In this document: piece after piece, positions 388-51,638 of the stretch
Layout of the letters: each line of letters begins with the position of its first letter
Position numbering within the stretch: position 1 is the first letter of the stretch
Position numbers and translations under genes: made by a program
The notes under the pieces: generated by a model
Databases searched by the model: none
Told to the model about the DNA's origin: nothing
The model's input: the letters and a program-made list of their open reading frames with translations, nothing else
Origin: Guillardia theta CCMP2712
Taxonomy: Eukaryota > Protista > Cryptophyta
NCBI RefSeq assembly: GCF_000315625.1
Contig: NW_005434635.1
Coordinates: 372,001-436,000 of the forward strand
DNA: 64,000 nucleotides
Direction: 5' to 3'

Positions 388-1197
388 CTCATCGAGGAGA
401 GGAGGGGAATGCAGCATCATAGTAAATACAAGTAACTCCCAGACCTTGCCCAAGGTCCACCGGCGGCCATCCGGGCCCACACGGTGCCGGTGGGCCCGGG
501 GGGGATGTTCGGTGGCACTCAGAGCTGTGGCTCCCGGCCCGGCCGGGTCCGTTACTCACTGGCACCTTTGAGTAAAGAGGCACCGGAGGGCCCGGCTCAG
601 CTGTGACGGTGACGGTTACAGTATGATTGATTAGATGTAACGTTTTCAACGTCCGTCCAGGCAGTTGGTTGAGTGAACTTTCAGGATTGCAAATCGGGGG
701 GGTTGTGAATGAGAATTGGGGGGTAGGGGTAGTTCTTGTACCGTACTCTGAAACTGAGAAACAATGGGTGATTGTTAATTTTCAATGAGGTCCTGTCTCT
801 GTAAATGGGGTAGGGTACCCAATGGGGGGTGGGGTAGGTTATGTTCCCCGACGGACAAATCAGGGCTCTTGCCAGCTTTCCCTCTCCTTCCCCTCCTCCC
901 TTCCTACCCAAACACACAGTAACATACCCTCCTCCCTTGTCCTCCTCCTCCTCCCCCTCCCCGCTTCCTCTCCTCTCTCATCCTTCTCCTTCCTTCTCCT
1001 CCTTCCCCTCCTCCCTTATCCTCCTCCTTCAATTTCTTTTCCGTCTCCTCAAACATTTCAACTCCACCAGACTCATATCTGGACGCCAAGTACTCTCCCT
1101 TATTCTCTCCTAAACTCTCCTCTCTCCTGTCTTCTCTGTTCACTGTCTTGTCTCCCAACCATCTACCTGTCAAGATCTTAGCCTAGCTCACGGAGAA

Positions 1198-2540
1198 ATG
1201 TCCATTCGAATGCGGCGGCAGAGCCCTCGGAAGGAGCTTCACGCTGTTGATTCCAGCTCACCTGGTCCTGGCATGTACAACGTCGGCACTGACCGCGATA
1301 TTGGGAGGACCAAGAGCAGAATGCAGGAGTGGAAGTCGCCGATGCGAAAGGTGGAGTGGTGAGCGAGAGGAGGGGAGCGGGATGGTAGGAGGTTGACCGG
1401 CTCCCCTTGACCTTCAGGTTTCTGAGGAAGACAGAATCTGCAGATGTATCGTTCCCGCAGATGATGGACCACAACGGGATCGCGAGGTTGTCAGCAGATG
1501 ATCTTATCGTTTGTGTGTGTTGAGCGTGAAGGCTGTGATCCACGTGCTCTTTGTACGGTAGTTGTATGTGTCGTTGACAACATCAACGTTTGTGTGATTG
1601 TGTGCGAGTCAAGAATCAGTATGAATATTGTCAGTTTGATGGATTGCAATGGTGCAGTTGATCACAGTTGTTGTCAGAGAATGAGAATCACTGTAATGAT
1701 CATCCATCTACCAATCTCGCGTGCTGCGCTGATCTGGACGGGGCAGGACGATCATCAGGTCGGAGCAACGGCTCAAAACGACGATGGGGACGAGGAGCAG
1801 TCGCTCACCCCCGACGTGCTGGGACGGCAGGAGGCCGTCGGAGAAAATCAACTATCAGGTTGCTGGACTGTGCTGGGGGAGAGCAGGGAGTTTCAGTCTT
1901 TCTCACTTGTCTGCTTCTGCCGTCAGATCTTCCAAGTGATCCCTCCCTACTTCGCCAGCTACAACCTCGGCCCGGGGTCCTACGTGGTCCAAGACGACAG
2001 GGAGATCGGCAAGACCAAGAGCAGGATGCAGGAGTGGTACGACACTGAGGTCAACGTGAGGGTGAGGTGACGGGGATGGCAGGAAGTCGCCGCTGAGAGA
2101 GACGAGCTGGTTCAACAGGACGAGCGATGCTCCTTCCGACTTGTTCGCCTTCTCGCCCTTGAAGTGCGTTGACCCCTTCATACTCTTCGGAGAAGCAGCG
2201 GAAGGGGCGGGGGGGAGGGGGAGCGGGTTGGTGGGCAGGTGGGGGGGGGGAACACACACATCCATCCTTGAAGTTGTTACTATTCGCTCAATTTGATGCT
2301 TCAGTTCTCCCTCGCGAAACAGGACGGGCGGGAGGCACTCGCATGAAAGAGAAAGGGGCAAAGGGCATGTAGGAAGGCAACCTACCACTCTCTTCCACAG
2401 GGAGAGCAGGGAGCGACGTCATTCCCGGCAGAGTTTTCCTCAAGCTGGACCACGTCAGCGTTGGCAGCATGACCTCCGTTGGACCTGATTCGCAGAAGTC
2501 GCCGTCCGTCATGAAAGTCTTTCAACTCCAATCCAATGAG
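1198..2540 (+). CDS. PG-rich (PGPGxY, STPG/SHIPPO/ODF3-like) repeat protein, probably flagellar; 3' end uncertain because of the gap at 2578
   Basis: Spliced product has two ~40-aa repeats: SPGPGMYNVGTDRDIGRTKSRMQEWKSPMRKVEWFLR and LGPGSYVVQDDREIGKTKSRMQEWKSPLRETSWFNR; introns join in consistent phase. Confidence 0.6.
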
Positions 2541-2577
2541 TCTTCGTTGTTGACCACTGATGTGGGGTTAGATGGGC

Positions 2578-2677
2578 NNNNNNNNNNNNNNNNNNNNNNN
2601 NNNNNNNNNNNNNNNNNNNNNNNNNNNNNNNNNNNNNNNNNNNNNNNNNNNNNNNNNNNNNNNNNNNNNNNNNNNNN
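2578..2677. other. Assembly gap (100 N)
   Basis: Run of N. Confidence 1.
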
Positions 2678-3297
2678 GAGGGAGGGGGGGGAGAAAGGGA
2701 ATCCCCGGGAAAGGGTGGTAACCATATCTCGCATCAAATGGGGGGGCTGCAGGTTCCCCCTCGCGAGAAAACAAGAGAGGGGGGGGGAGGGCATCTGGCA
2801 GGGCGGATAGGGACTTTTAGAATTCCCCCCCCCCCCCCCCCTTTTTTCCCTTTTTCCCCTCCCAAACTTCTTTTTCTTCTTTCCCCCCCCAATTCTTCTT
2901 CTCCCTTCCCCCCCCGCTTTTTTTTCCTCCCATTTTTTTTTAATTTTTTCCCTTCCCCCCGCCCTCCCTGCCTGTTAACCCCCCCCCCCCCCCCCTCCTT
3001 GCGTTCTCACATTTCACCCTCCTCCTCCTCCCTCTGTCCCAACATGTTTGTCTAACTGTGTCTGGTCAGTGGCCTACTGTTGAAGACGATGGAAACTTTC
3101 GGAGAAAGAGAGGAGGCACCAATACATAAACTCCCTCCTCTCTTTCTCTTCCCTCCCCCTCCTCCCTCCTCCCTCCTCCCTCCTCCCTCCTCCCTCCTCC
3201 CTCCTTGCGCTCTGCCTCCTTTCCATACTCTTGCAACTCTCCCCTCGCTTCTCATAGGACGGAGTTTCTAATGAATACCATGCAGCTTGAGCTTGTG

Positions 3298-6200
3298 CTA
3301 ACTAGGGGAGGGCAGCTTGAAGGCTCTGCACGTGCTATCGTCTGATCCCGTCAGCACGAATTTCGCGTCTCTGGTGATGGCGATACTGAGAATCGCCTGG
3401 GAGACAAGTTAGGAAAGGAGATGGAAGGGGGGGGGGAGCAAGTGGGGAAAGGGAGTGGAAGGAGCACGGAGAGGGAGAACAGAGAAGAAGATGCGAGTAC
3501 AGGAGAGAATGAAGAACAAATGTCGATCGAATGACAAACAGCAGCGCAAGAAGACAAAAAAAAATGGAAGGAGATCAACAACAATCCACAGCAGCAGCAG
3601 CAGCAACAACAACAACATGAGCAGCAGCAGCAGCAACAACAGGAGCAGCAGCAGCAGCAACAACAACAACAGGAGCAGCAGCAGCAGCAACAACAACAGG
3701 AGCAGGAGCGCACGTGCAGCCAGACCTTATGGTGCCCCCGGAAGACTTTGATGAGGGAGCCGTCGAGGATGCTCCAGACGTAGAGGTTTCCCTTGGCTCC
3801 AGCTGAGAAGAGCATCGGAGATGAGACATGCATCAGCAGCTTCGTCGCCCCCTCGTGCTGCGGCACTCCATGCTCGTTCGTTCGTCGCGTCTGGTAGCAG
3901 CACGCTCGCTCGCGGCCGTTGGCTGTGGAGGATGAGTGAAGACAGTGAGAACAAGCACGCAAGTGAAGAGCAGGAACAGGAGCAAGAGCAAGAGCAGGTG
4001 CAGGTGCAGGTGCAGGTGCAGGTGCAGGTGCAGGTGCAGGTGCAGGTGCAGGTGCAGGTGCAGGTGCAGGTGCAGGTGCAGGTGCAGGAGCAGGAGAGAG
4101 AAGGAGTGGGGAACAACCTATCTCCCATATCCTTACGGAGCCATCCATGCTGGCGGTGATGGCGATATCGGGGTAGTACTTGGAGATGAGAATGTCTTCA
4201 ACTTAGCCAACAGTCAGAGAGGAGAAGATGAGCAGATCAAAGATAGAAGAGGTGGCAAGGAAAGAGCCTGGATGATGTGGAGCATTGCAAGGGACTTACT
4301 CGATGCTGTGTGCCCTGACGTGGCGAAAAGAGGAAATTTGTTGATGATCCTGGCAAAGGGTTGAGAAGGAGAAGTAGAACAAGACAAGATGTGAAGAAGG
4401 AGGGGAGAAGAAAAGAGATCATATCAAGACGGAAGAAGAGACACATGTCAGCCAGAACAAGAAGCTAAAACATGCAGGCGAGAAAATTTGATTTCACATG
4501 TTCCCTTCCTCCCTCGTCACTCACTTTCCCGTCTGCGAGTGGAACAGGATGACCCGCCCGTTCTTGTCGCCGCTCACACAAACAGGATCAGAGGGATGGC
4601 ATGCAAGAGCCGTAACGACGTCAGCATGTGCGTTCACGGGATCATTGATACCTGAGGAACGTTAGGAAGAGAAGAGGAGGAGAGGGTCGATTGTGATCAA
4701 ATTGGATAATAAATTGAATATCAAGGGCAGCGCAATCAGGCAGGACGAGAGACAAACGGAATAGAAAGAAGAAAGAAGATGAATGATTCAGGAATGCAGC
4801 AGGCTGAGGACGAGGACAAGGACAAGGACAAGGACGCAGGGGGACAGGAGGAGGTGGAGCAGCGCGGGTCCTACTGCGGAGGAGGGAGCCTGTCTTAGGG
4901 CAGAAGATCTGTGGAGGATTCGAACGTGAGCGAAACGAGTTTGACCAGCTGGAAGTAGCAGCACCCGGAGAACTCCGTCAATGCAGCCGGTGACGACAAG
5001 CTTTCCTCCTGCTCGATCGCGTCACGGCAAAAGAAAGCAGGAGGATGAAGAAGTAGATGACGACGAGGAAGAGAAGTAGCAACAAGCAGCAGGTGCGAGA
5101 GAGAAAAGGGGAGAAGACTGTCAAAGTGCTCGGTGAGCAAACAGTGAGCAACCTGCTGCAAAACCTCCGCATGTGACAGAACCAGGATGACTGCAAGAGA
5201 AAAAAACTTCAGAAGAGAGCTTCTCCTCCCTCCCTCTCCCTCTCCCTCTCTCTCTCACCTTGTAAATACTTGCAGACAGGTGCCATAGTAGGATTGTTGG
5301 GGCTCTGCTCCACAGACAAGTCATCCTTCCTCACGCAGAAAAGAAATTTCGCTTTCCTCCCTCCCTTGAGCTGCTCGAGATCTCCCACATGAAGCAGTTG
5401 CCATCGTCTGAACCTGCATGATCCCCACAGATCAGCGACTGAACTGCCAGGACGTGACGGCGTACCAGCGAGAATGACCGATCCTCTCGGGTGCCACTCC
5501 ATCCAGTTCATAGTCCCCGATCCCTCCTGCCATGGCAGGGCATCACGTCAGACTCTTGCGAGACTTGCTGCTTGCTCCACCAGGCTCGTAACCAGCTCTC
5601 CCGTGTCTGCCATCCTTGAAGCAGTTCAACAACAGCACATGGCGGCATAGCAAGCATATACCAGACTTTGATGACTCCATCCATGGCGGCGGCGGCGATG
5701 AACCTGTCAAGCATGTCAAGACAAGAACTTTCTCCCATCCGCATGACTCACGTCCCCTCGTGACTGAAGCGGACATCTATCACAGAGTCCTGCCCTCAAA
5801 CAGTCAGCAAACAATTTGATATTTTCATCTGGCATCCAGTACCGTGAAAGTGCTGTTTTCGACTTTCATCTCCTTCAGGCCTCCTCTTTCTTTGTATTGC
5901 CATAGCGACAGACTGTCATCTCCTCCGCCACACGCAAACTTGGAGCTGTCATATGGACTTGTGCTCAGACTGTAAACCCTGTGCAAGCAAGGTCACCAGA
6001 AGAAGCTTGTGTTGCGGTACTTACGGTCCTGCTCTTGCTATGCATGCAGCTGCATCGTCTTCGAGAGTCTTGAGGACACCAACATCGTCATCGTCGTCAG
6101 TCTCTTGCTCAACACCGTCGTCTTGCTCGTCAAACATGTCCACCCTGTATGTGGTGTTGGGGTCCGAAGGCTCGGACCCATCCACCAACACCTTGGGAGT

Positions 6201-6750
6201 GACGTCAATGACGCGTCAAGGAATCGGATTCTACCAGAGACCTCATCGGATTTCAAGAAGATGATGTCTGAGTCGTCATACATCTGCTGCAAATTTTCTC
6301 TCGAGGCCTCTTTCTTCTGCCTGTCCTCCCCGTCCTCTTCCTCTCCTTTCCCCCCATTACATGATTTTTCGCCTTGATCGCCTGCATGCACAAATCATTC
6401 AGACTGGTGACTGAAGCTTGCGCGACACATGTTAAACCAGTTTCTCCTCCTGATTCTCCTCCTCTCAGGCCCACAAAGTTGTTCACATGAAGATCCCTCC
6501 GTGTCTGCAGCAGAAGTCTCCTGTAACATGCACCATGTAAGGACGTGCAGGTAAGGACAATGTGAACAGAAGGAGGGGACAAAAACCTTAGGAGTGTATG
6601 CGCATGTAGTTCAAGGAGTTGAGAGGTAAGACCATGCTCGCACTTGCACGTGGCTCCATGGTGCTCGAGCAGAGCACCTTGAGCAACCACGATGAAGGAG
6701 GCCCACAGGCAAAGGAGGAGAGTAGAAATTTGAATGAGCATCATCATCAT
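3298..6750 (-). CDS. AAMP: WD40 protein AAMP/Sqt1 (uL16 chaperone family) with N-terminal signal peptide and LRGG-containing leader; multi-exon
   Basis: Spliced motifs: acidic region then EDDAAACIARAGPVYSLSTSPYDSSKFACGGGDDSLSLW; AAAMDGVIKVW; NWMEWHPRGSVILAG; MDGSVRIWE; FRGHHKAILSIAITRDAKFVLTGSDDSTCRAF; N-terminus MMMMLIQISTLLLCLWASFIVVAQG. Confidence 0.8.
3588..3707. repeat. (CAG/CAA)n trinucleotide array in an AAMP intron
   Basis: Interleaved cagcagcag/caacaacaa blocks. Confidence 0.9.
3995..4084. repeat. (CAGGTG)15 hexanucleotide microsatellite in an AAMP intron
   Basis: Perfect tandem copies. Confidence 0.95.
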
Positions 6751-6974
6751 ATCACGCTCTTTCTTGATCTATGGAGACGCCATGGACGTCATCGCCTCAA
6801 CAGCTCAACTCCGTCGCATCATCGCTCATCGCGGCTCCTCCGCCATGTTCGCCCCTTCTCCCCAACGCCCTCGTTTCTCCCGAATCCCACTGGCCGCATT
6901 GTTTCCCCCTTGTTTCCCCTCATCCCCGCTCATTCACCCCACTCCCGAAAAAGGAGCCGACCACAGAGCCGACC

Positions 6975-7190
6975 ATGTTCGGAACCATCCGGCAAGCGCG
7001 CATGGCGCTGATGCTGTTGAGCACGGAGACGACCGATGCTCTGATCTCTGTGGCCGAGGCCATCGACAAGACGTCAGTGGATGATCCTGCTCCTCCAGCC
7101 GTCGACCCCTCCATCACTGCAGAGGTGGCAGATGCGCAAAAGGAGGTGGACGAAGAGCAGAAGGCGCTAAAGGCGGTGTATTCAGCGTGA
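6975..7190 (+). CDS. Small (71 aa) protein of unknown function, MFGTIRQARMALMLL...
   Basis: ATG in gaccATG context, GC3-rich codons, acidic Ala-rich C-terminal half; divergent from AAMP. Confidence 0.5.
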   Translation: MFGTIRQARMALMLLSTETTDALISVAEAIDKTSVDDPAPPAVDPSITAEVADAQKEVDEEQKALKAVYSA

Positions 7191-7259
7191 GCATGCGTGC
7201 TGGTTCGGTTTGAATGTGCCGTGGTGGATATATTCAGACAGATTTCATCGATAAATGTT

Positions 7260-8250
7260 TCATGTATCACCCTGCTGCTATAGAGCCTGTCCATAACTCC
7301 CGATGCAAAAGTTCGCCCAGATCACCGGCCTTACCTTGAAGCTGCCAAGGTGACCGAAGACTTGTAGAGGTTGAGATGAGATGGACACGCATCGTGAATG
7401 ATGTACGTGACATGATAGCTCCTCGTGGAGTTCGCACCCCTTGCTCTAACCGAGTCCACAAGTCGAGTTTCTCCCCCAGTCTGTAGCTTCGATCGAGCAG
7501 GAGCCACGCAAGGGACGGAAGGTACTCGGAAGGTTTGAGTGTGCCGAATCTCGATTACTGGCTGAGTGTGAGAGGAGGGGAGGAAGGGGGAATGAGAGGT
7601 ACAGCGAGGGCAGATAGACGAAGACGAAAAGGGGGAGGGAGTGGAACAGGATATATAGCGTGGACGAGAAACGCTGCTTCGTTTCTTTCTTGGCTGACGG
7701 CGCCATATCTCATCGAAAGAATGAATGCTGGAGTATGTGAGATGGAGATGAAGGCATAAGAACTACATGAAAGAGGAGATCACATGATCAAATTTACAGA
7801 TATTCGCATTCATCGCAGCTTCTTGTTGCTGTTGTACATGTTCACGATACTGTGACGTCAGTGCCGGATGGCAGACTTCATGAAAAACCAACAGTTGTTT
7901 GTTGATTGAGGAACGATGGTGTTCTCAAACAGCAGATAGCCCACGATATCTCGGCCATACACGCAGTCTTGTATTGGGGTTGTCTTCTAGCCAATTTCAG
8001 ATCTCGTTACACTTCGGTTCCAAAGCAACAATGGATTGGAGTAGTCCCTTCCAGCTCCTAGGAAATTCCTGCTCCCCGCCCCCTTTCCCCCTCCCCCTCG
8101 TCCCCCTGATCTCTCCGCCTCTTTCACCTCCTCTTCTCATCTCCCCTCCTCCCCAGCACGCTGATACCTCACCGACTCCGCAGTGCATCTGATTTTGACC
8201 TCTAAAGTTGGTCCTCAGACTCATACCCAGCTCCTCCCAGCAGCTCATGA
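7260..8250 (-). CDS. Probable multi-exon hypothetical gene; frame not resolved
   Basis: Series of GT..AG intron-like segments separating short open exons; no recognisable motif. Confidence 0.25.
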
Positions 8251-8292
8251 CATCTAACGCCTTGCTGCTCCACACCTCCCACTAGCATACCG

Positions 8293-9654
8293 ATGTTCAG
8301 TCGAAGACAGGGGTCCCTCCTCCTGGTCTACAGCACCATCGCCATCTCCATGATAGTCTGGTACAAGTACGAACAGAGCAGAGACGTTGCCCGACTGTCA
8401 GAGCTGCCAGCGAGCTTGTTCACGGACAAGAATCGGCCCTTCAGCATCGCGTCCTCTCCTCCTCCTCGGTCCTCCCATAGCTCACGATCCTGCACAGGGG
8501 TGGATTGGAAGTCGCGCTCCTGTGCCTACCGCAACCTCTGCGGACGGGGTGATAGAGGGAGGAAGGTTCCTCTACTTCCAGCATCCGGACGACGTCTCCT
8601 CCCTCTCCTTAGACTGGGCTGTCTCCCTTCAGAGCGGACATGGCGGCTACGGCCCTCGTTGGAGCCCCGTCACAGTCAACGGGACGGTGCCAGGGAACGC
8701 CACGTGGGTCGACCTGGGAGGGGACGCTGCTGTGTTTGTCACGGAGTACAACTGGGCCAACCCGAGCCTGCTGGTGGCCGACTCGTTCTTCCCGTGGTAT
8801 GCGCTGCTGGCGAGCTTCATGCAGTCCTCCACCTCCTCGCTCGGCATCAAGATCAGGCTGGTCAGCCCCCTCCCCTGGTCCTGCGACTGGCAGCGGAGCC
8901 ACAACACTTCGTGGGCCCACTGGTGCGACAAGATCTGGAACAAGTTCTGCCCTGGCAACGTCCCATTCATGATGACCTCTCGTCGCCTGCTCGACTTGTC
9001 CGACCTCGCAGCTCACAACCGATCCCTCCTATGCTTTCCTCGCGTCCTCGCTGGGGTCGGGCGTTGGACGGATCACTGCAGTGACTCTTACGTCCATGGG
9101 GAGAGCCAAGCATGGACCCGCAGGGCCCTGGACGACCTGGACGTGAACGCGTACTGTAACGCGGGGCGATCCCTGCTCTACCATAATTTCCGAGAGTTTG
9201 TGCGATCCAACCTCAACATCCAGCCTTCCATCACAGCAAGACAGGTCCTCCTGGGCAACTTCCATGTGGAGGACAACTTTCAACTGAGGTTGACAAGTTG
9301 CTGCGGTACCTGCCCTCTGTTGCCAGCCATCTGAGAGAATGGGGATTTCATCCCTTGCTTGCAGACCTCCCTAAGATGAGCTTGAAGGAACAAGTTGCTG
9401 CTGCCATGAGGAGCGAGGGATATGTCGGAGTTTGCGGGGGAGGCTCTACCTTCGTTGCCCTCTTCCTGTCACGGTTCGCTCTCTTCCTCGTTGCCTGCTC
9501 CAGCCCCAAGATCCTCGACTACGAGCTCTTGCTCAACATCGGCTTCCTGCGAGTCGAGTACCTGAACAGCCTTCCTCCCTCCCCAGCTGACTTGGCTGGT
9601 CACGTCCAAAGGCTCCTCCAGGTCTCTCAGCTTGCTAGGGGGCGTCGCCGGTGA
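8293..9654 (+). CDS. Type II membrane glycosyltransferase, GT61-like; intronless, with two apparent frameshifts (~8545, ~9280)
   Basis: N-terminal TM segment; RSCAYRNLC; C-terminal MSLKEQVAAAMRSEGYVGVCGGGSTFVALFL resembling GT61 'S..EQ......G.HGAG....FL'; split over three frames. Confidence 0.6.
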
Positions 9655-9995
9655 CTCGTGAGTCTCGGAGGCCGCGGCGTCGCTAACTTGGAGTTCTAAA
9701 TACTACTGTACCATATCATCCGCGGTCTCTCAGTCGACGGACTCCCTCCCCGGGCCGCGGCCCGGCGGCGGGGCCCGGCCGGCGCCGCCGGCCCGAGTCG
9801 GCCGCCGGTCTCGGGGGGGCCCGCCGTTCAGAGTCAGGCCTCGTCGGGCCACGCCGGGTGCCAACGGTCAGGCCCGACCGGGAGCAGGGCCGGGACCCCG
9901 GCGGACCGGACCCGGTCCGTCTTACTTGGTAGCGGTACTACGGTACGGTACTCCGTAGGCCGCCGGGCCGCGCCCGGCTCCGGCGGCGATCGGAG
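9655..9995. repeat. GC-rich palindromic intergenic island
   Basis: cccgggccgcggcccgg, ggcccggccggcgccgccggccc, cggtactacggtacggtac. Confidence 0.7.
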
Positions 9996-34320: not shown

Positions 34321-36118
34321 ATGAGTTCGGCAGCAGCGAGGAGATCAATCCTGCTAGCCGCATGCATCTTGTTCTTCAGCTTGGGACTTCTTGACTCGTC
34401 CCTCGTGCTGAAAGACTCTCTGTTGCCGAAAGGAGCTTTGAACCTTGTTGGTATGTAAGCCCTTGCTTTTTTAGGAAAATCTTTGTGTAGATATGCTGAC
34501 CCTGCAGCAGCACATCACAAACTTGGATTCATTCGACTCAGAGGAGGATCGTCACACGAGGCACACGAACAAGGGGCAGGAGGTTTGATATCTCATGCCT
34601 GTCGCTTGTTTTTTCTCGAGAACAACTGAACGTTCAGTGACTGTCTGCCTTGCACGCAGAAAGCTACGAGGAGGAAGAGGAGGAGGAGGAAAGTAACGAT
34701 GTCCCTGAAGATGCGCCGGAAGGTTGCCCAGGCACGACATCAGAAATGGCAGGCAAGTCGTCGACATGCGTGGGATGTCCCAACCAAGCAGCATGCGCCT
34801 CTGGCCAGTCGTCTGCCCCTGATCCAGCCATAGAAGAGATCAAAGCGAGAATGTCGCTCGTGAAACACAAAATCCTCGTGCTGAGCGGGAAGGGAGGAGT
34901 GGGAAAATCGACAGTCGCATCTCAAGTTGCGATGGCGTTGAGCGGAGGAGGCAACGTGACTGGTTTGCTTGACATCGATGTCTGTGGGCCTAGTGCGCCT
35001 AGAATGCTCGGCGTTGAGGACATGGACGTGCATCAGTCAGGGTCAGGGTGGCAGCCTGTTTGGGTGGATGAGAACTTGTGCGTGATGTCTATCGGCTTCA
35101 TGCTCCCCTCACGAGATGACGCGGTCGTATGGAGGGGGGTAAGGAAGATTGGTCTGATCAAACAGGTGAAGTTGACACTCGCTCTTGCCTCCCCTTTTCT
35201 CATTGTCAAGTTCAGTTCCTCAAGGATGTGAACTGGGAGAAGCTTGACTACCTCGTCATCGATGCTCCTCCGGGCACATCAGATGAACACATCACAATCG
35301 CCCAGTGCCTCAACCAAACGTCAAACGTCGGAGCCGTCATCGTCACTACCCCACAGGTTGTTTCTTTGCCTGACCGAGTTCTCTTGCTCTCTTTTACGCT
35401 AAGAGAGCATGTGCTTCTGCTGTACCCGTTCCTCCTCTTCCTCACATCTTCTCATTGACCAGGAGGTCGCACTGTTGGACGTCAGGAAGGAGATCAACTT
35501 CTGCAGGAAAGCAGGAGTCAAAATCCTTGGGGTCATAGAGAACATGGCCGGTTTTGTCTGCCCTCACTGCGGAAACTCCTCAGAGATCTTCGTTCCGAGC
35601 GAAGCTGACTCAGGTCGTGAACGAATTCATGTCACTGACTTCACCTGTGCCTCACTCCAGCTTGCTCTTTTCAGTCCAAGGACCCAGCGCGGTCCTCCGG
35701 GGAGCGGAGGCGATGGCCAAGAAGCATGGTATTCCCTTCCTGGTAATGCACGTGCACTTTTCCTGCCACCTGCAAACACGCTGCATGCTATTCATCCACC
35801 AGTTCACTCTGCCCAACACCTCCCATGCTCTCAACCCGATCCCCTTCAAACAACCTCTCCTCCTCCTCATCCTCCTCCTTTATTTCCCGCCATGCTCTTG
35901 TATCCCATTCACACTGTGAACAAAGGGAAGGATTCCTCTAGACCCGAAGCTAGGTATCGCGTCAGAACGAGGGGTAAGCACAACCCACAGCTCCTTCTCC
36001 ACCTCGCTGCTCCTCACTCACGAACTCCCAACAGGAAGCGCTCAAGAATTCTCTTGCGTTGCAGTCTCTACAGTCAGCTGTCCAGAATCTCCGAATCAAC
36101 TGCAAAGGAAACACCTGA
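34321..36118 (+). CDS. NUBP1: Cytosolic-type Fe-S scaffold NUBP1/Nbp35 with signal peptide and RLRGG leader (multi-exon)
   Basis: CX13CX2CX5C ([24 protein letters not shown]); GKGGVGKST; DIDVCGPS; [13 protein letters not shown]; VTTPQEVA; [11 protein letters not shown]; GKIPLDP; leader [26 protein letters not shown]...GFIRLRGG. Confidence 0.93.
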
Positions 36119-36353
36119 GCAGCGTAAGTTTGAAGTGTGGGGTCATGTGTAAGCAGCTGGGGCTGGTACATCAGTACATCCTTTCATTCATCGTCTGCCT
36201 CTGCTGCTGCCCTCTCCTCCTCTCTTCTTCTCTCCTCTCTCTCCCTCCTCCAAGGACGACGTGGTCGCTTGTCCCCATACCAGCCCGGAGCTCCGCAGCC
36301 CTTGTGTCCTGCGTTGCGGGAGCACGGGGAGGGGTCGACCAGGCAGGAGCAGC

Positions 36354-49957: not shown

Positions 49958-51638
49958 TCAAAACTTCACCGGCTCCGCGTTGAATCCCAGGTTGGCGAAA
50001 GGAAACATGCTTCTCTTGAGCTGTAAGACTCTTTACACAACCCCAGGAAAGGATCGAGGCGAACAAACCTGACGTTTGTCTTCATCAAGCAACTCGATTC
50101 TTGTCAGGTCGTTGCGAAATTTCGCCTGGGGAACTACATGAGGCCGGCTTCAAGTTCCCCTCGCTCCCTTCTCCTCATTCCCAACACCAGCGTTCTCTCC
50201 TGTTTCTCCCCTCCTCTCAACTTCCTCATCCCTTCTCCTCATCTATCTTCCCTCTTCCCTTCTCTGTTAGCCTTCCCTTCCCCCCCTCCATTCCCTGCTC
50301 GCCCCTGCTCACCTTGTACCACTTCGCCAGGATCCGACCGAAGTGTGGTTCCTGCAGGCGGGAGGGTCACCCGGGATGGCATTGCAGGAGGACTCACAGA
50401 AAAACTTGGCTCCTTCTCGGCGAAGGGAAAATTCTTAATGAACTCCGAGTAGAGCTCCCGGAACGTGACGTTGCCTTGGTCGGTCAACCGACAGTTGGCA
50501 AACGCTTCAACGCAGTACGTCAGGATCTCCTTCACTTCCTTCCTGTCGTCCTGAGGTGCTGCAGACCTCTTCGACTTCCCTGCGCTCATCCCTGCATCCT
50601 TTCCCTTCAACATCTTACCCTTCCTGGCCTTCCCTTCGCTCCTCTCCTGCTTCGCCTTCACCGCCTGCCCACCACTCTTAGCGGATGAGCGAACGACGTT
50701 CAGTCCCAGCTTGGCAAAAGACTTGTCCATCTCTTTGTCGTAGAGCGCCTGGACGGTGCGGAGGGGCGTCAAGTCCGACTCAGTGTAGTGCGGGTTGATG
50801 AGCGACATGCCGATATACGAGCCGCTCCTGCTCTTCTTCAACGGCTTCCCCGTCTTGGTCTCGTACCAGGCCTGGATGCTCCGCCCGAGTGTCACGTTGG
50901 GCAGGACGTCCTCGGAGGCGAAGGAGGGGAACTCCTCTCTGAAGACTCTGCTGATGGTAGCGAACCTCACACGGCCCTTGAGCCGCAGCAGACTGCTGGC
51001 AAACGCCTCAAACGCTCCATTGACTTGCGACACTTTGAGCGGAGCTGGAGAGTCTCCTGCGAGGAAGAAGAAAACTCATCAGGTAAGACAAGGAAGATGG
51101 CGCAAGAGAATGAGGAGAAGAACTCGTTGTCTCTTCACCTTTCTTGCTCTCGGCTGCCTCCTTTCCTCCTTGATCCAAGTCCGTGACAGCAGTCTCTGCA
51201 TGGCAACGCTTACAACATGCAAGTTGGCAGGAGATTAGGACCTGTTGAACCTTGTGACATGAGCAGAGAGCAAACTCTTCTTGCAGGCTGAGATGCTGCA
51301 AAGGAAAACTGAAAGGATACCATCAATCAGTCGAAAGCTCTCCACTCCTAACCGCATCCTCCTCTGCCCTCCCCCTCCTCCCCCTCTCTTCATTCTCACT
51401 GGAATTTTCAGTATGTTCTCACCGCAGGGCTGCAGATCCCCGAGCAGCGAACGGGATGGCGCGGGTGCAGGGATGCAATGCCGCCAGCATGGAGGAGAGG
51501 ACTGAACCCATCGGCAGGATGAGGAGCCAGAAGGAGAGACAGAACAAGGAAGCTAAGGCTCAGAGGGGGGGAGGAGGAGGAGGAGGAGGAGGAGGAGGAA
51601 CGAGCGGGGGGTGGAGGAGGAGCGCCCATTCCCTGCAT
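49958..51638 (-). CDS. Predicted plastid-targeted protein with two winged-helix-like repeats (multi-exon)
   Basis: Hydrophobic signal LSLSFLVLSLLLAPHPADG-FSP, then basic/Ser-rich transit-like region; repeats FEAFAS..GRVRFATISRVF..LGRSIQAWY..SYIGMSL and VEAFAN..GNVTFRELYSEF..FGRILAKWY..PFANLGF. Confidence 0.6.

What the first reader, a model, noticed from the sequence alone, without database searches (positions are those of the whole stretch)
6440..6750. Ribosome-assembly chaperone Sqt1/AAMP with a signal peptide followed by a ubiquitin-like LRGG motif
Seen: in-frame hydrophobic signal peptide (MMMMLIQISTLLLCLWASFIVVAQG-A), a basic leader, then FVGLRGG (LRGG at 6468-6457) immediately before the acidic AAMP N-terminus. 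Known: Sqt1/AAMP is a cytosolic uL16 chaperone; LRGG is the ubiquitin C-terminal cleavage motif; in complex red plastids, bipartite leaders lacking +1 Phe direct proteins to the periplastid compartment. Inference: a host-encoded factor for nucleomorph 80S ribosome assembly, with its leader removed by a deubiquitinase-like protease.
Basis: partly seen in the sequence, partly recalled or inferred. Interest (0 to 1): 0.75.

Follow-up and report, generated by a model that had tools for sequence, protein, structure and literature searches.

The report
LRGG-ended import leader on algal Sqt1/AAMP
In the alga Guillardia theta, a divergent copy of the ribosome-assembly chaperone Sqt1/AAMP is expressed with a secretion signal and a spacer ending in ubiquitin's last residues (LRGG), so it is probably sent into the remnant cytoplasm of the alga's red-algal endosymbiont.

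Summary
The window is Guillardia theta CCMP2712. RNA contigs from three runs give a minus-strand gene of 19 coding exons and 546 aa. It starts at the ATG at 6750 and encodes a hydrophobic signal-like segment, an Arg/His-rich spacer and GLRGG (LRGG at 6468-6457), all in frame. A 66-nt in-frame intron (6586-6521) is spliced out.

The public model GUITHDRAFT_109462 (369 aa) starts at Met116, so it lacks the whole leader; it also skips four exons and reads through two introns.

The protein belongs to the AAMP/Sqt1 family but sits in a divergent clade. Its one full-length relative, from marine metagenomes (taxon unknown), also has a signal peptide, an unalignable spacer and GLRGG.

A second gene in this window, Nbp35-like, has the same kind of leader (...IRLRGG). 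The leader of G. theta's periplastid Nbp35 is published as periplastid-targeting.

Periplastid targeting is therefore likely. Cleavage after GG by a ubiquitin-type protease is plausible but untested. No paper found mentions the motif. This scan has already noted LRGG-ended leaders on many other stretches of this genome.

I could not search for a leaderless cytosolic paralogue.

The parts
3209..6901 (-). Whole transcribed gene as covered by RNA contigs: 19 coding exons giving a 546-aa AAMP/Sqt1-family protein.
   Evidence: Spliced contigs of runs X1, X2 and X3; splice sites refined and the open reading frame checked.
6751..6901 (-). 5' untranslated part of exon 1 as seen in contigs. It holds seven upstream ATGs with short ORFs of 4-26 codons.
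   Evidence: The true transcript start is not resolved, because contigs cannot show starts.
6676..6750 (-). Signal-peptide-like segment, aa 1-25. The hydrophobic core is LLCLWASFIVV, with A-Q-G before the likely cut.
   Evidence: Kyte-Doolittle 11-residue maximum 2.70 at aa 12-22; small residues at -3 and -1. This is a heuristic only; SignalP was not available.
6587..6675 (-). Rest of exon 1: first part of the transit-peptide-like spacer (aa 26-55).
6521..6586 (-). Intron 1: 66 nt, GT..AG, open and in frame, spliced out in RNA.
   Evidence: (record positions of X2 record 7 and X3 record 9).
6438..6520 (-). Exon 2: Arg-rich end of the spacer, then GLRGG, then ESGGET.
6457..6468 (-). The LRGG motif (aa 73-76).
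   Evidence: GLRGG is also present in relative P0152 at aa 46-50.
6242..6381 (-). Exon 3: acidic extension. It contains Met116 (ATG at 6283-6281), where the public model GUITHDRAFT_109462 starts.
3298..6191 (-). Exons 4-19: acidic N-terminal region and WD40 propeller, with the stop codon at 3300-3298.
   Evidence: colinear alignment with Sqt1/AAMP proteins.
5305..5356 (-). Non-canonical GA..AG intron (52 nt), spliced in all three RNA runs.
   Evidence: joint 5304/5357, ends CT..TC on the + strand; one search found no GT..AG placement; the frame stays open only if it is removed.
34323..34548 (+). Comparator in the same window: leader of an Nbp35-like gene, with a signal-like start, an intron, then ...[10 protein letters not shown] (LRGG at 34537-34548).
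   Evidence: A downstream ORF (35409-36149) has a ParA/NUBPL P-loop domain at E 1e-15.

Best explanation
The stretch encodes the N-terminal import leader of a divergent, nucleus-encoded AAMP/Sqt1-family protein of Guillardia theta.

Shown here: the gene is expressed. The leader exons are spliced in frame onto an acidic extension and a WD40 propeller that is colinear with Sqt1/AAMP. The leader has a signal-peptide-like segment, a basic and poorly conserved spacer, and GLRGG. The one full-length relative keeps this layout and the GLRGG.

Inferred: the signal peptide takes the nascent protein into the ER lumen that surrounds the complex plastid. The spacer acts as a transit-peptide-like signal for passage through the ERAD-derived SELMA translocon into the periplastid compartment. 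There the protein would chaperone the endosymbiont-type ribosomal protein uL16 (Rpl10) for assembly of the compartment's own 60S subunits. LRGG marks the end of the leader and is most likely a processing site. A ubiquitin-type protease of the periplastid ubiquitin system could cut after GG, because it must already cut ubiquitin fusions there.

Rough odds: real translated leader 0.9; periplastid destination 0.7; cut after GG by a ubiquitin-type protease 0.35.
For: - RNA contigs of three runs (two organism labels, three studies) carry exon 1 with the ATG at 6750 and every splice joint. The spliced frame is open for 546 aa.
- Exact match to G. theta CCMP2712 protein GUITHDRAFT_109462.
- The best named relatives are Sqt1 ('60S ribosomal subunit assembly or modification protein') and AAMP. 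The Atlas nearest clusters, by features and by structure, are all AAMP/Sqt1.
- The alignment with Sqt1/AAMP proteins is colinear.
- The model of relative P0152 is an eight-bladed propeller whose best VIA matches are Sqt1 (Z 46.1, rmsd 1.9 A, 346 residues aligned).
- P0152 has a signal peptide, a 24-residue spacer and GLRGG. Spacer similarity to G. theta is at shuffle level, score 10 against a mean of 11.9. The two proteins form a clade with 100/100 support.
- A second LRGG-ended leader sits on an Nbp35-like gene in this window. The leader of G. theta's periplastid Nbp35, fused to GFP, localised to the periplastid compartment in Phaeodactylum (PMC6105332).
- 80S ribosomes, some assembly factors, a 26S proteasome and a ubiquitin system are reported for the cryptophyte periplastid compartment (PMC6559170). 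Nucleomorph genomes carry rpl40 (PMC3017389); that this is the ubiquitin-L40 fusion gene is from my own knowledge.
Against: - There is no localisation or N-terminal protein data for this protein.
- The signal-peptide call rests on heuristics only.
- The contig 5' ends include up to seven upstream ATGs, so translation from 6750 may be inefficient, or the true transcript start may lie closer to the ATG.
- The raw-read RNA run gave no cover over the 5' exons, so shorter transcripts cannot be excluded.
- The relative P0152 comes from an unidentified marine eukaryote with an intron-poor genome of 60% GC, unlike G. theta. If that organism has no periplastid ribosomes, the proposed function would need rethinking.
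- Ubiquitin-specific proteases normally also recognise ubiquitin's folded body, which these leaders lack.
- ptDUP has no cryptophyte member (PMC12412216).
- The four Rpl10-binding acidic residues of Sqt1 were not checked.
Confidence: 0.6

Rival explanations
1. LRGG is functional but is not a deubiquitinase site. It could be recognised by another periplastid processing peptidase, or act as a sorting or retention mark that stops the protein from going on into the plastid stroma.
For: The motif is kept between two very divergent relatives while the rest of the leader is unalignable. The leaders have no ubiquitin fold. No ptDUP-type enzyme is known in cryptophytes (PMC12412216).
Against: The match to the last residues of ubiquitin and NEDD8 is exact (RLRGG in the Nbp35-like leader). 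A ubiquitin system with enzymes that cut after GG is expected in the compartment (PMC6559170). That rpl40 in PMC3017389 is the ubiquitin-L40 fusion is my own knowledge.
Confidence: 0.25
2. One gene serves two compartments. Translation from Met1 gives the periplastid form, and translation from Met116 gives a leaderless host-cytosolic AAMP, either by leaky scanning past a start weakened by upstream ORFs or from a downstream transcript start.
For: The public model starts at Met116, just before the FL.SDE motif where canonical AAMP N-termini begin. There are seven upstream ATGs in the longest 5' end. No second G. theta AAMP appeared among the hits.
Against: The word search needs shared 5-residue words and a set length range, so a missing paralogue means little. 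The protein sits on a long branch away from canonical AAMPs, which is unexpected for the chaperone of the conserved host uL16. No RNA evidence for a short 5' end was seen.
Confidence: 0.12
3. The protein enters the secretory pathway but stays in the ER or is secreted. LRGG would then be incidental.
For: A signal-like N-terminus alone does not specify the periplastid compartment. The spacer is not a textbook Ser/Thr-rich transit peptide in G. theta (5 Ser/Thr in 47 residues, 6 His).
Against: A ribosomal-protein chaperone has no known role in the ER lumen. The same leader type sits on an Nbp35-like gene, and the leader of G. theta's periplastid Nbp35 targets the periplastid compartment (PMC6105332). 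GLRGG is conserved in the relative.
Confidence: 0.08
4. LRGG is a chance tetrapeptide in a Gly/Arg-rich leader, with no function.
For: Seven LRGG strings occur in the six-frame translation of this 64-kb window, several of them in GGA-rich low-complexity DNA.
Against: The chance in a 100-residue leader is about 0.5%. It recurs as GLRGG in the divergent relative, and as RLRGG on a second signal-bearing gene in the window, each time at the end of the spacer.
Confidence: 0.05

Closest known systems
Sqt1 (yeast, Chaetomium) / AAMP (animals, plants): dedicated chaperone of ribosomal protein uL16/Rpl10 (PMC4491177)
   Same: An acidic, disordered N-terminal extension followed by a WD40 propeller. The alignment is colinear, including the W.WHP..V.LAGS.DG..WMW signature. 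The best named sequence, feature and structure matches are Sqt1/AAMP. The relative folds as an eight-bladed propeller.
   Different: A 76-residue leader (signal, spacer, LRGG) and about 40 further residues precede the canonical start. The protein lies in a divergent two-member clade on a long branch. That clade shares inserts in the region of Gt model residues ~300-315 and in the large insert at ~452-475. Binding of uL16 and conservation of the four binding residues were not tested.
Bipartite targeting sequences of nucleus-encoded periplastid proteins of cryptophytes and diatoms (signal peptide plus transit-peptide-like region without aromatic or Leu at +1; PMC6105332 citing Gruber 2007 and Patron and Waller 2007)
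   Same: A signal-like start and a basic spacer. The +1 residue is Ala (or Gln with the alternative cut). The cargo is a housekeeping, cytosolic-type protein. The same design is seen on the Nbp35-like gene in this window.
   Different: The spacer ends in a conserved LRGG, a feature I found in no paper. The processing site of periplastid-resident proteins has not been defined in the papers read.
Ubiquitin, NEDD8 and ubiquitin-fusion precursors cut after ...LRGG by ubiquitin C-terminal hydrolases
   Same: The last four residues (five in the Nbp35-like leader) are identical and are followed directly by the cargo.
   Different: No beta-grasp domain precedes the motif: no Pfam ubiquitin hit, a spacer of only 24 residues in P0152, and pLDDT below 50 across it. 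That 76 residues precede the cut in G. theta, equal to ubiquitin's length, looks like coincidence.
ptDUP, the periplastid deubiquitinase proposed for SELMA import in diatoms (Hempel 2010, as cited in PMC12412216)
   Same: It would act in the same compartment, at the same import step, on imported precursors.
   Different: The ptDUP clade is present in haptophytes, stramenopiles and chromerids but not in cryptophytes (PMC12412216). It is thought to remove ubiquitin from lysines, not to cut a linear leader.

Membership tests
AAMP/Sqt1 (uL16 chaperone) | Closest sequence relatives are Sqt1/AAMP proteins over most of the length | tested here: met
   after self and P0152, the named hits are Sqt1-annotated fungal proteins (E 5e-42 and 1e-32) and fish AAMP (E 9e-26), covering 80-93% of the query; all ten nearest Atlas clusters are AAMP/Sqt1 (scores 0.95-0.98); colinear alignment of the 546-aa model.
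AAMP/Sqt1 (uL16 chaperone) | Eight-bladed WD-repeat propeller (PMC4491177) | tested here: met
   Tested on the relative P0152, because the joined G. theta model could not be submitted. AlphaFold model residues 188-563 have high confidence. The top Foldseek and VIA matches are eight-bladed propellers, with Sqt1 first (Z 46.1), although within 2 Z of TBLR1 and Rsa4. The G. theta model aligns across all blades.
AAMP/Sqt1 (uL16 chaperone) | Non-essential acidic N-terminal extension before the propeller | tested here: met
   Residues 77-185 carry net charge about -25. The equivalent part of P0152 is predicted to be disordered.
AAMP/Sqt1 (uL16 chaperone) | Conserved acidic top-surface residues that bind Rpl10 Arg3/4/7/10 (yeast E110, E156, E315, D420) | not tested
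   I could not obtain a residue-level alignment to yeast Sqt1. PDB sequence searches were swamped by designed and generic WD40 proteins.
AAMP/Sqt1 (uL16 chaperone) | Binds nascent uL16 and supports 60S assembly | not testable with these tools
   Needs pull-down or two-hybrid assays with nucleomorph-type and host-type uL16 N-termini.
Cryptophyte periplastid-directed bipartite leader | N-terminal signal peptide | tested here: inconclusive
   The hydrophobic core (KD 2.70) and A-x-G before the likely cut fit a signal peptide. There is no positive n-region, and no dedicated predictor was available.
Cryptophyte periplastid-directed bipartite leader | Transit-peptide-like region whose first residue is not aromatic or Leu | tested here: met
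   The +1 residue is Ala26 (cut after AQG) or Gln24 (cut after VVA). The spacer has net charge +1 and is Arg/His-rich. Criterion as stated in PMC6105332.
Cryptophyte periplastid-directed bipartite leader | Localisation in the periplastid compartment | not testable with these tools
   Support is by analogy only: the leader of G. theta's periplastid Nbp35 localised to the periplastid compartment in Phaeodactylum (PMC6105332), and the Nbp35-like gene in this window carries the same leader type.
Ubiquitin-like proteins | Beta-grasp fold ending in LRGG | tested here: not met
   LRGG is present, but no Pfam ubiquitin match at E up to 10 on leader exons or on P0152 residues 1-190. The leader is disordered in the model, and the spacer is only 24 residues in P0152.

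The most novel reading that the evidence does not exclude
LRGG-ended leaders are a general processing code for proteins imported into the cryptophyte periplastid compartment and nucleomorph. A resident ubiquitin-type hydrolase, standing in for the ptDUP that cryptophytes lack, would cut the leader after GG as if it were a linear ubiquitin fusion. This AAMP/Sqt1 copy would be one of a set of imported factors that build the endosymbiont's own 80S ribosomes.
Probability: 0.3. Interest if true: 0.8.

Novelty: new variant of a known kind. Interest (0 to 1): 0.6.

Why it matters
How proteins that stay in the periplastid compartment lose their transit-peptide-like leader is not known, and cryptophytes lack the deubiquitinase proposed for this step in other algae (PMC12412216). 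A short, conserved motif identical to ubiquitin's tail at the end of such leaders gives a directly testable cut site. It would also give a simple sequence mark for finding periplastid and nucleomorph proteins that current gene models miss. This gene's public model lacks the whole leader, so any prediction based on it would place the protein in the cytosol.

The gene also suggests that the endosymbiont's 60S assembly depends on an imported, dedicated uL16 chaperone, which adds to the picture of how far the nucleomorph has outsourced ribosome biogenesis.

Tried and rejected
**Searches that gave nothing useful**
- Exon-by-exon PDB and Pfam searches gave only generic WD40 matches.
- PDB sequence searches with P0151, with a family profile and with a fungal Sqt1 homologue were swamped by designed or generic WD40 chains. 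As a result the Rpl10-binding residues could not be mapped.
It yielded only an 84-aa Hanusia phi fragment.
- A word search with the unspliced 165-aa leader ORF found nothing.
- Exact look-ups of window ORFs and of the 71-aa neighbour found nothing.
- The first metagenome scan, with the acidic exon, found nothing. The second found three contigs of one organism that cover only the middle of the gene, not the leader.

**Ideas rejected**
- An intron right after the signal peptide (CAAG|GT at 6678) is wrong. That splice would hit a stop, and RNA shows the donor at 6587/6586.
- The leader is not a degenerate ubiquitin, even though exactly 76 residues precede the cut. It has no profile match and shows almost no positional identity on inspection.
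- A third LRGG at 51559 lies in GGA-rich low-complexity DNA with no signal peptide upstream, and is probably chance.
- Apparent synteny between the metagenome contig and this window rests only on a repeat-rich PG-motif protein.

**Steps not possible or left out**
- The taxon of P0152 could not be fixed.
- The joined spliced model was used only in local scripts and was not sent to any search tool. The public model P0151 and single exons were searched instead.
- The Curtis 2012 genome paper is not held.

Full report
**What is in the sequence**

On the minus strand an ATG at 6750 opens a reading frame. The region is eukaryotic, with many short introns.

RNA contigs from three public runs (two organism labels, three studies) were laid on 3000-7400 and give the splice pattern. 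I refined each joint to GT..AG and added the two joints that the output did not list: one from a loose end at 5527 and one from sequence (5258-5191). I then checked that the spliced frame is open.

The result is a minus-strand gene of 19 coding exons:
- The contigs begin at 6901, 6896 and 6841, all upstream of the ATG.
- The coding sequence runs from 6750 to a stop at 3300-3298 and gives 546 residues.
- The first intron (6586-6521) is 66 nt, open and in frame. The unspliced ORF therefore also reads through, but the mRNA lacks those 22 codons.
- One intron (5356-5305) has GA..AG ends in all three runs.

The raw-read RNA run gave almost no cover here, so transcript starts and strand come only from the contigs and the splice-site orientation.

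**Organism and public model**

A word search restricted to one 65-aa exon returned a 100% match to 'hypothetical protein GUITHDRAFT_109462 [Guillardia theta CCMP2712]' (P0151, 369 aa). This confirms the organism that earlier notes of this scan had named.

The public model differs from the RNA-based one. It starts at Met116 (ATG 6283-6281) and so lacks the entire leader. It also reads through the GA..AG intron (5356-5305), skips exon 5304-5259 and reads on through the intron at 5258-5191, and it skips three further exons (5008-4965, 4908-4875, 4201-4118). All four skipped exons align with conserved propeller strands of relatives. A localisation prediction based on the public model would call this protein cytosolic.

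**What the protein is**

Single exons give only generic WD40 matches. With P0151 as query the picture is clear:
- After self and a metagenomic relative, the best named hits are fungal proteins annotated '60S ribosomal subunit assembly or modification protein' (the Sqt1 annotation) and fish 'angio-associated migratory cell protein'.
- The ten nearest ESM Atlas clusters are AAMP or Sqt1 for both P0151 and the relative P0152, and also by predicted structure for P0151.
- My 546-aa model aligns colinearly with these proteins from the FL.SDE motif near the canonical N-terminus to the C-terminus.

The joined model could not be handed to the structure tools, so I folded the relative P0152 with a 16-row alignment:
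- Residues 188-563 form a confident propeller.
- The best Foldseek matches are eight-bladed propellers.
- The VIA re-ranking puts Chaetomium Sqt1 first (Z 46.1, rmsd 1.9 A, 346 residues), though other eight-bladed propellers lie within 2 Z.

Sqt1 is defined as an eight-bladed propeller with a dispensable acidic N-terminal extension that binds the first residues of Rpl10 on an acidic top surface (PMC4491177). The first two features are met. The four binding residues could not be mapped, and binding itself cannot be tested here.

**A divergent subfamily with the same leader design**

P0152 (563 aa) comes from Tara Oceans and other marine metagenome assemblies. It is encoded without introns on gene-dense contigs of 60% GC, and I could not identify the organism. 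With the G. theta protein it forms a clade with 100/100 support on a long stem, apart from fungal, plant, animal, amoebozoan and haptophyte AAMPs. The two share inserts that the others lack.

P0152's N-terminus has the same layout: a signal-like segment, a 24-residue Ser/Thr/Pro/Gly-rich spacer, then GLRGG at 46-50.
- The spacers of the two proteins are no more alike than shuffled sequences (score 10 against a mean of 11.9).
- The 50-100 residues after GG are only marginally alike (z about 2-3) until the FL.SDE motif.
- GLRGG is therefore the one element kept in the first roughly 100 residues, across a distance of about 1.45 changes per site.
- The chance of LRGG in 100 residues of this composition is about 0.5%.

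Other relatives are fragments. A third organism in JGI metagenomes carries the same subfamily, but its contigs do not reach the leader. A Hanusia phi transcript fragment shows that the gene exists in a sister genus.

**A second case in this window, and the wider pattern**

At 34323-34548 on the plus strand another gene starts with a signal-like segment, an intron, and then ...[10 protein letters not shown] followed by SSHE. A downstream ORF has a ParA/NUBPL P-loop domain, so this is an Nbp35-type protein. Grosche et al. reported that G. theta has a periplastid Nbp35 besides the host one, and that its leader fused to GFP goes to the periplastid compartment in Phaeodactylum (PMC6105332). If that is this gene, and a signal-bearing Nbp35 fits, then an LRGG-ended leader has already been localised experimentally, without the motif being remarked on.

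Earlier notes of this scan report LRGG or LRLRGG at the end of many other G. theta leaders, including other ribosome-assembly factors. I did not check those. I mention them as leads, and to state plainly that the scan has found this pattern before on other DNA of this genome. Full-text searches found no paper that combines LRGG with periplastid, nucleomorph, Guillardia or cryptophyte terms.

**How it most likely works**

Established background:
- Cryptophytes keep 80S ribosomes, a 26S proteasome and a ubiquitin system in the periplastid compartment, and only some ribosome-assembly factors are nucleomorph-encoded (PMC6559170).
- Nucleus-encoded periplastid proteins use a signal peptide plus a transit-peptide-like region without an aromatic residue or Leu at +1 (PMC6105332).
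- Passage across the second membrane uses the ubiquitin-dependent SELMA machinery (PMC12412216).

This leader fits that scheme. The likely cut is after AQG, the +1 residue is Ala, the spacer is basic, and composition flips to strongly acidic right after GG. I infer import into the periplastid compartment and a role as chaperone of the endosymbiont-type uL16.

For LRGG the simplest reading is a processing site. A compartment that expresses ubiquitin fusions must hold an enzyme that cuts after LRGG; nucleomorphs carry rpl40 (PMC3017389), and that this is the ubiquitin-L40 fusion gene is my own knowledge. Also from my own knowledge, LRGG peptides are standard, if poor, substrates of such enzymes.

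There are points against a simple deubiquitinase model:
- The leaders have no ubiquitin fold.
- The ptDUP clade is absent from cryptophytes (PMC12412216).

Another peptidase, or a sorting role for the motif, remains possible.

**Open points**

A dual-use gene, with Met1 and Met116 as alternative starts, is a live rival.
- The longest 5' ends contain seven upstream ATGs. Either the real start lies nearer the ATG, or translation is regulated.
- The unknown identity of P0152's organism is the main caveat on the cross-species argument.

The joined spliced protein was built and used only in local scripts.

**Verdict**

The AAMP/Sqt1 identity and a periplastid-type leader are supported. The deubiquitinase cut is a reasonable but untested hypothesis. 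As a kind, this is a known class (a nucleus-encoded periplastid protein with a bipartite leader) with an undescribed conserved feature (the LRGG end).

Noticed in passing
window 5305-5356 (-): A 52-nt intron with GA..AG ends is spliced in all three RNA runs. No GT..AG or GC..AG placement fits. The public gene model reads through it.
   Followed up: partly
window 3298-6750 (-): The public model GUITHDRAFT_109462 (369 aa) lacks the first 115 residues, skips four exons and reads through two introns. The RNA-based protein has 546 aa.
   Followed up: yes
window 6909-7269 (+): A head-to-head neighbour gene lies here. Unspliced RNA contigs cover 6909-7269 and hold a 71-aa ORF (6975-7190) with no Pfam match and no exact match in the protein collection. 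Its contigs start only 8 nt from the 5' end of the AAMP contigs.
   Followed up: partly
window 34323-36150 (+): An Nbp35-like gene (ParA/NUBPL domain) has a signal-like start and a spacer ending in RLRGG. In both this gene and the AAMP gene, LRGG lies in exon 2, 6-12 codons before the next intron, and uses the same codons AGA GGA GGA.
   Followed up: partly
window 4764-4910: RNA contig depth jumps to 390-9700 in this bin, against about 2-185 around it, and many contigs run off into unlike sequence at 4805-4836. This is a short GTCCTT/GTCCTC-type repeat in an intron that is shared with abundant transcripts elsewhere.
   Followed up: no
window 3397-4117 (-): Two introns hold long microsatellites, (CA)n-like at about 3960-4100 and (GCA/CTG)n at about 3580-3710. 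They stay open in frame and create long false ORFs.
   Followed up: no
L006:96-3149 (also L005, L007): In JGI metagenome contigs of an unidentified relative (GC about 45%), the roughly 2.7-kb intron before the WMEWHPRG exon holds several decayed copies of that exon.
   Followed up: no
L002:1-19868: The contig carrying relative P0152 is intron-poor and gene-dense (about one gene per 1.3 kb, GC 60%). It encodes MLH1, NCBP3, zf-CCCH and DUF268 proteins. It is abundant in Tara Oceans assemblies, and its taxon is not identified.
   Followed up: partly
window 1198-2134 (+): The gene downstream of AAMP encodes repeats of the PG-rich 'VPGPGQY' type (sperm-tail PG-rich repeat-like). A similar protein lies 6 kb from the AAMP relative in L002, which is probably coincidence.
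   Followed up: no
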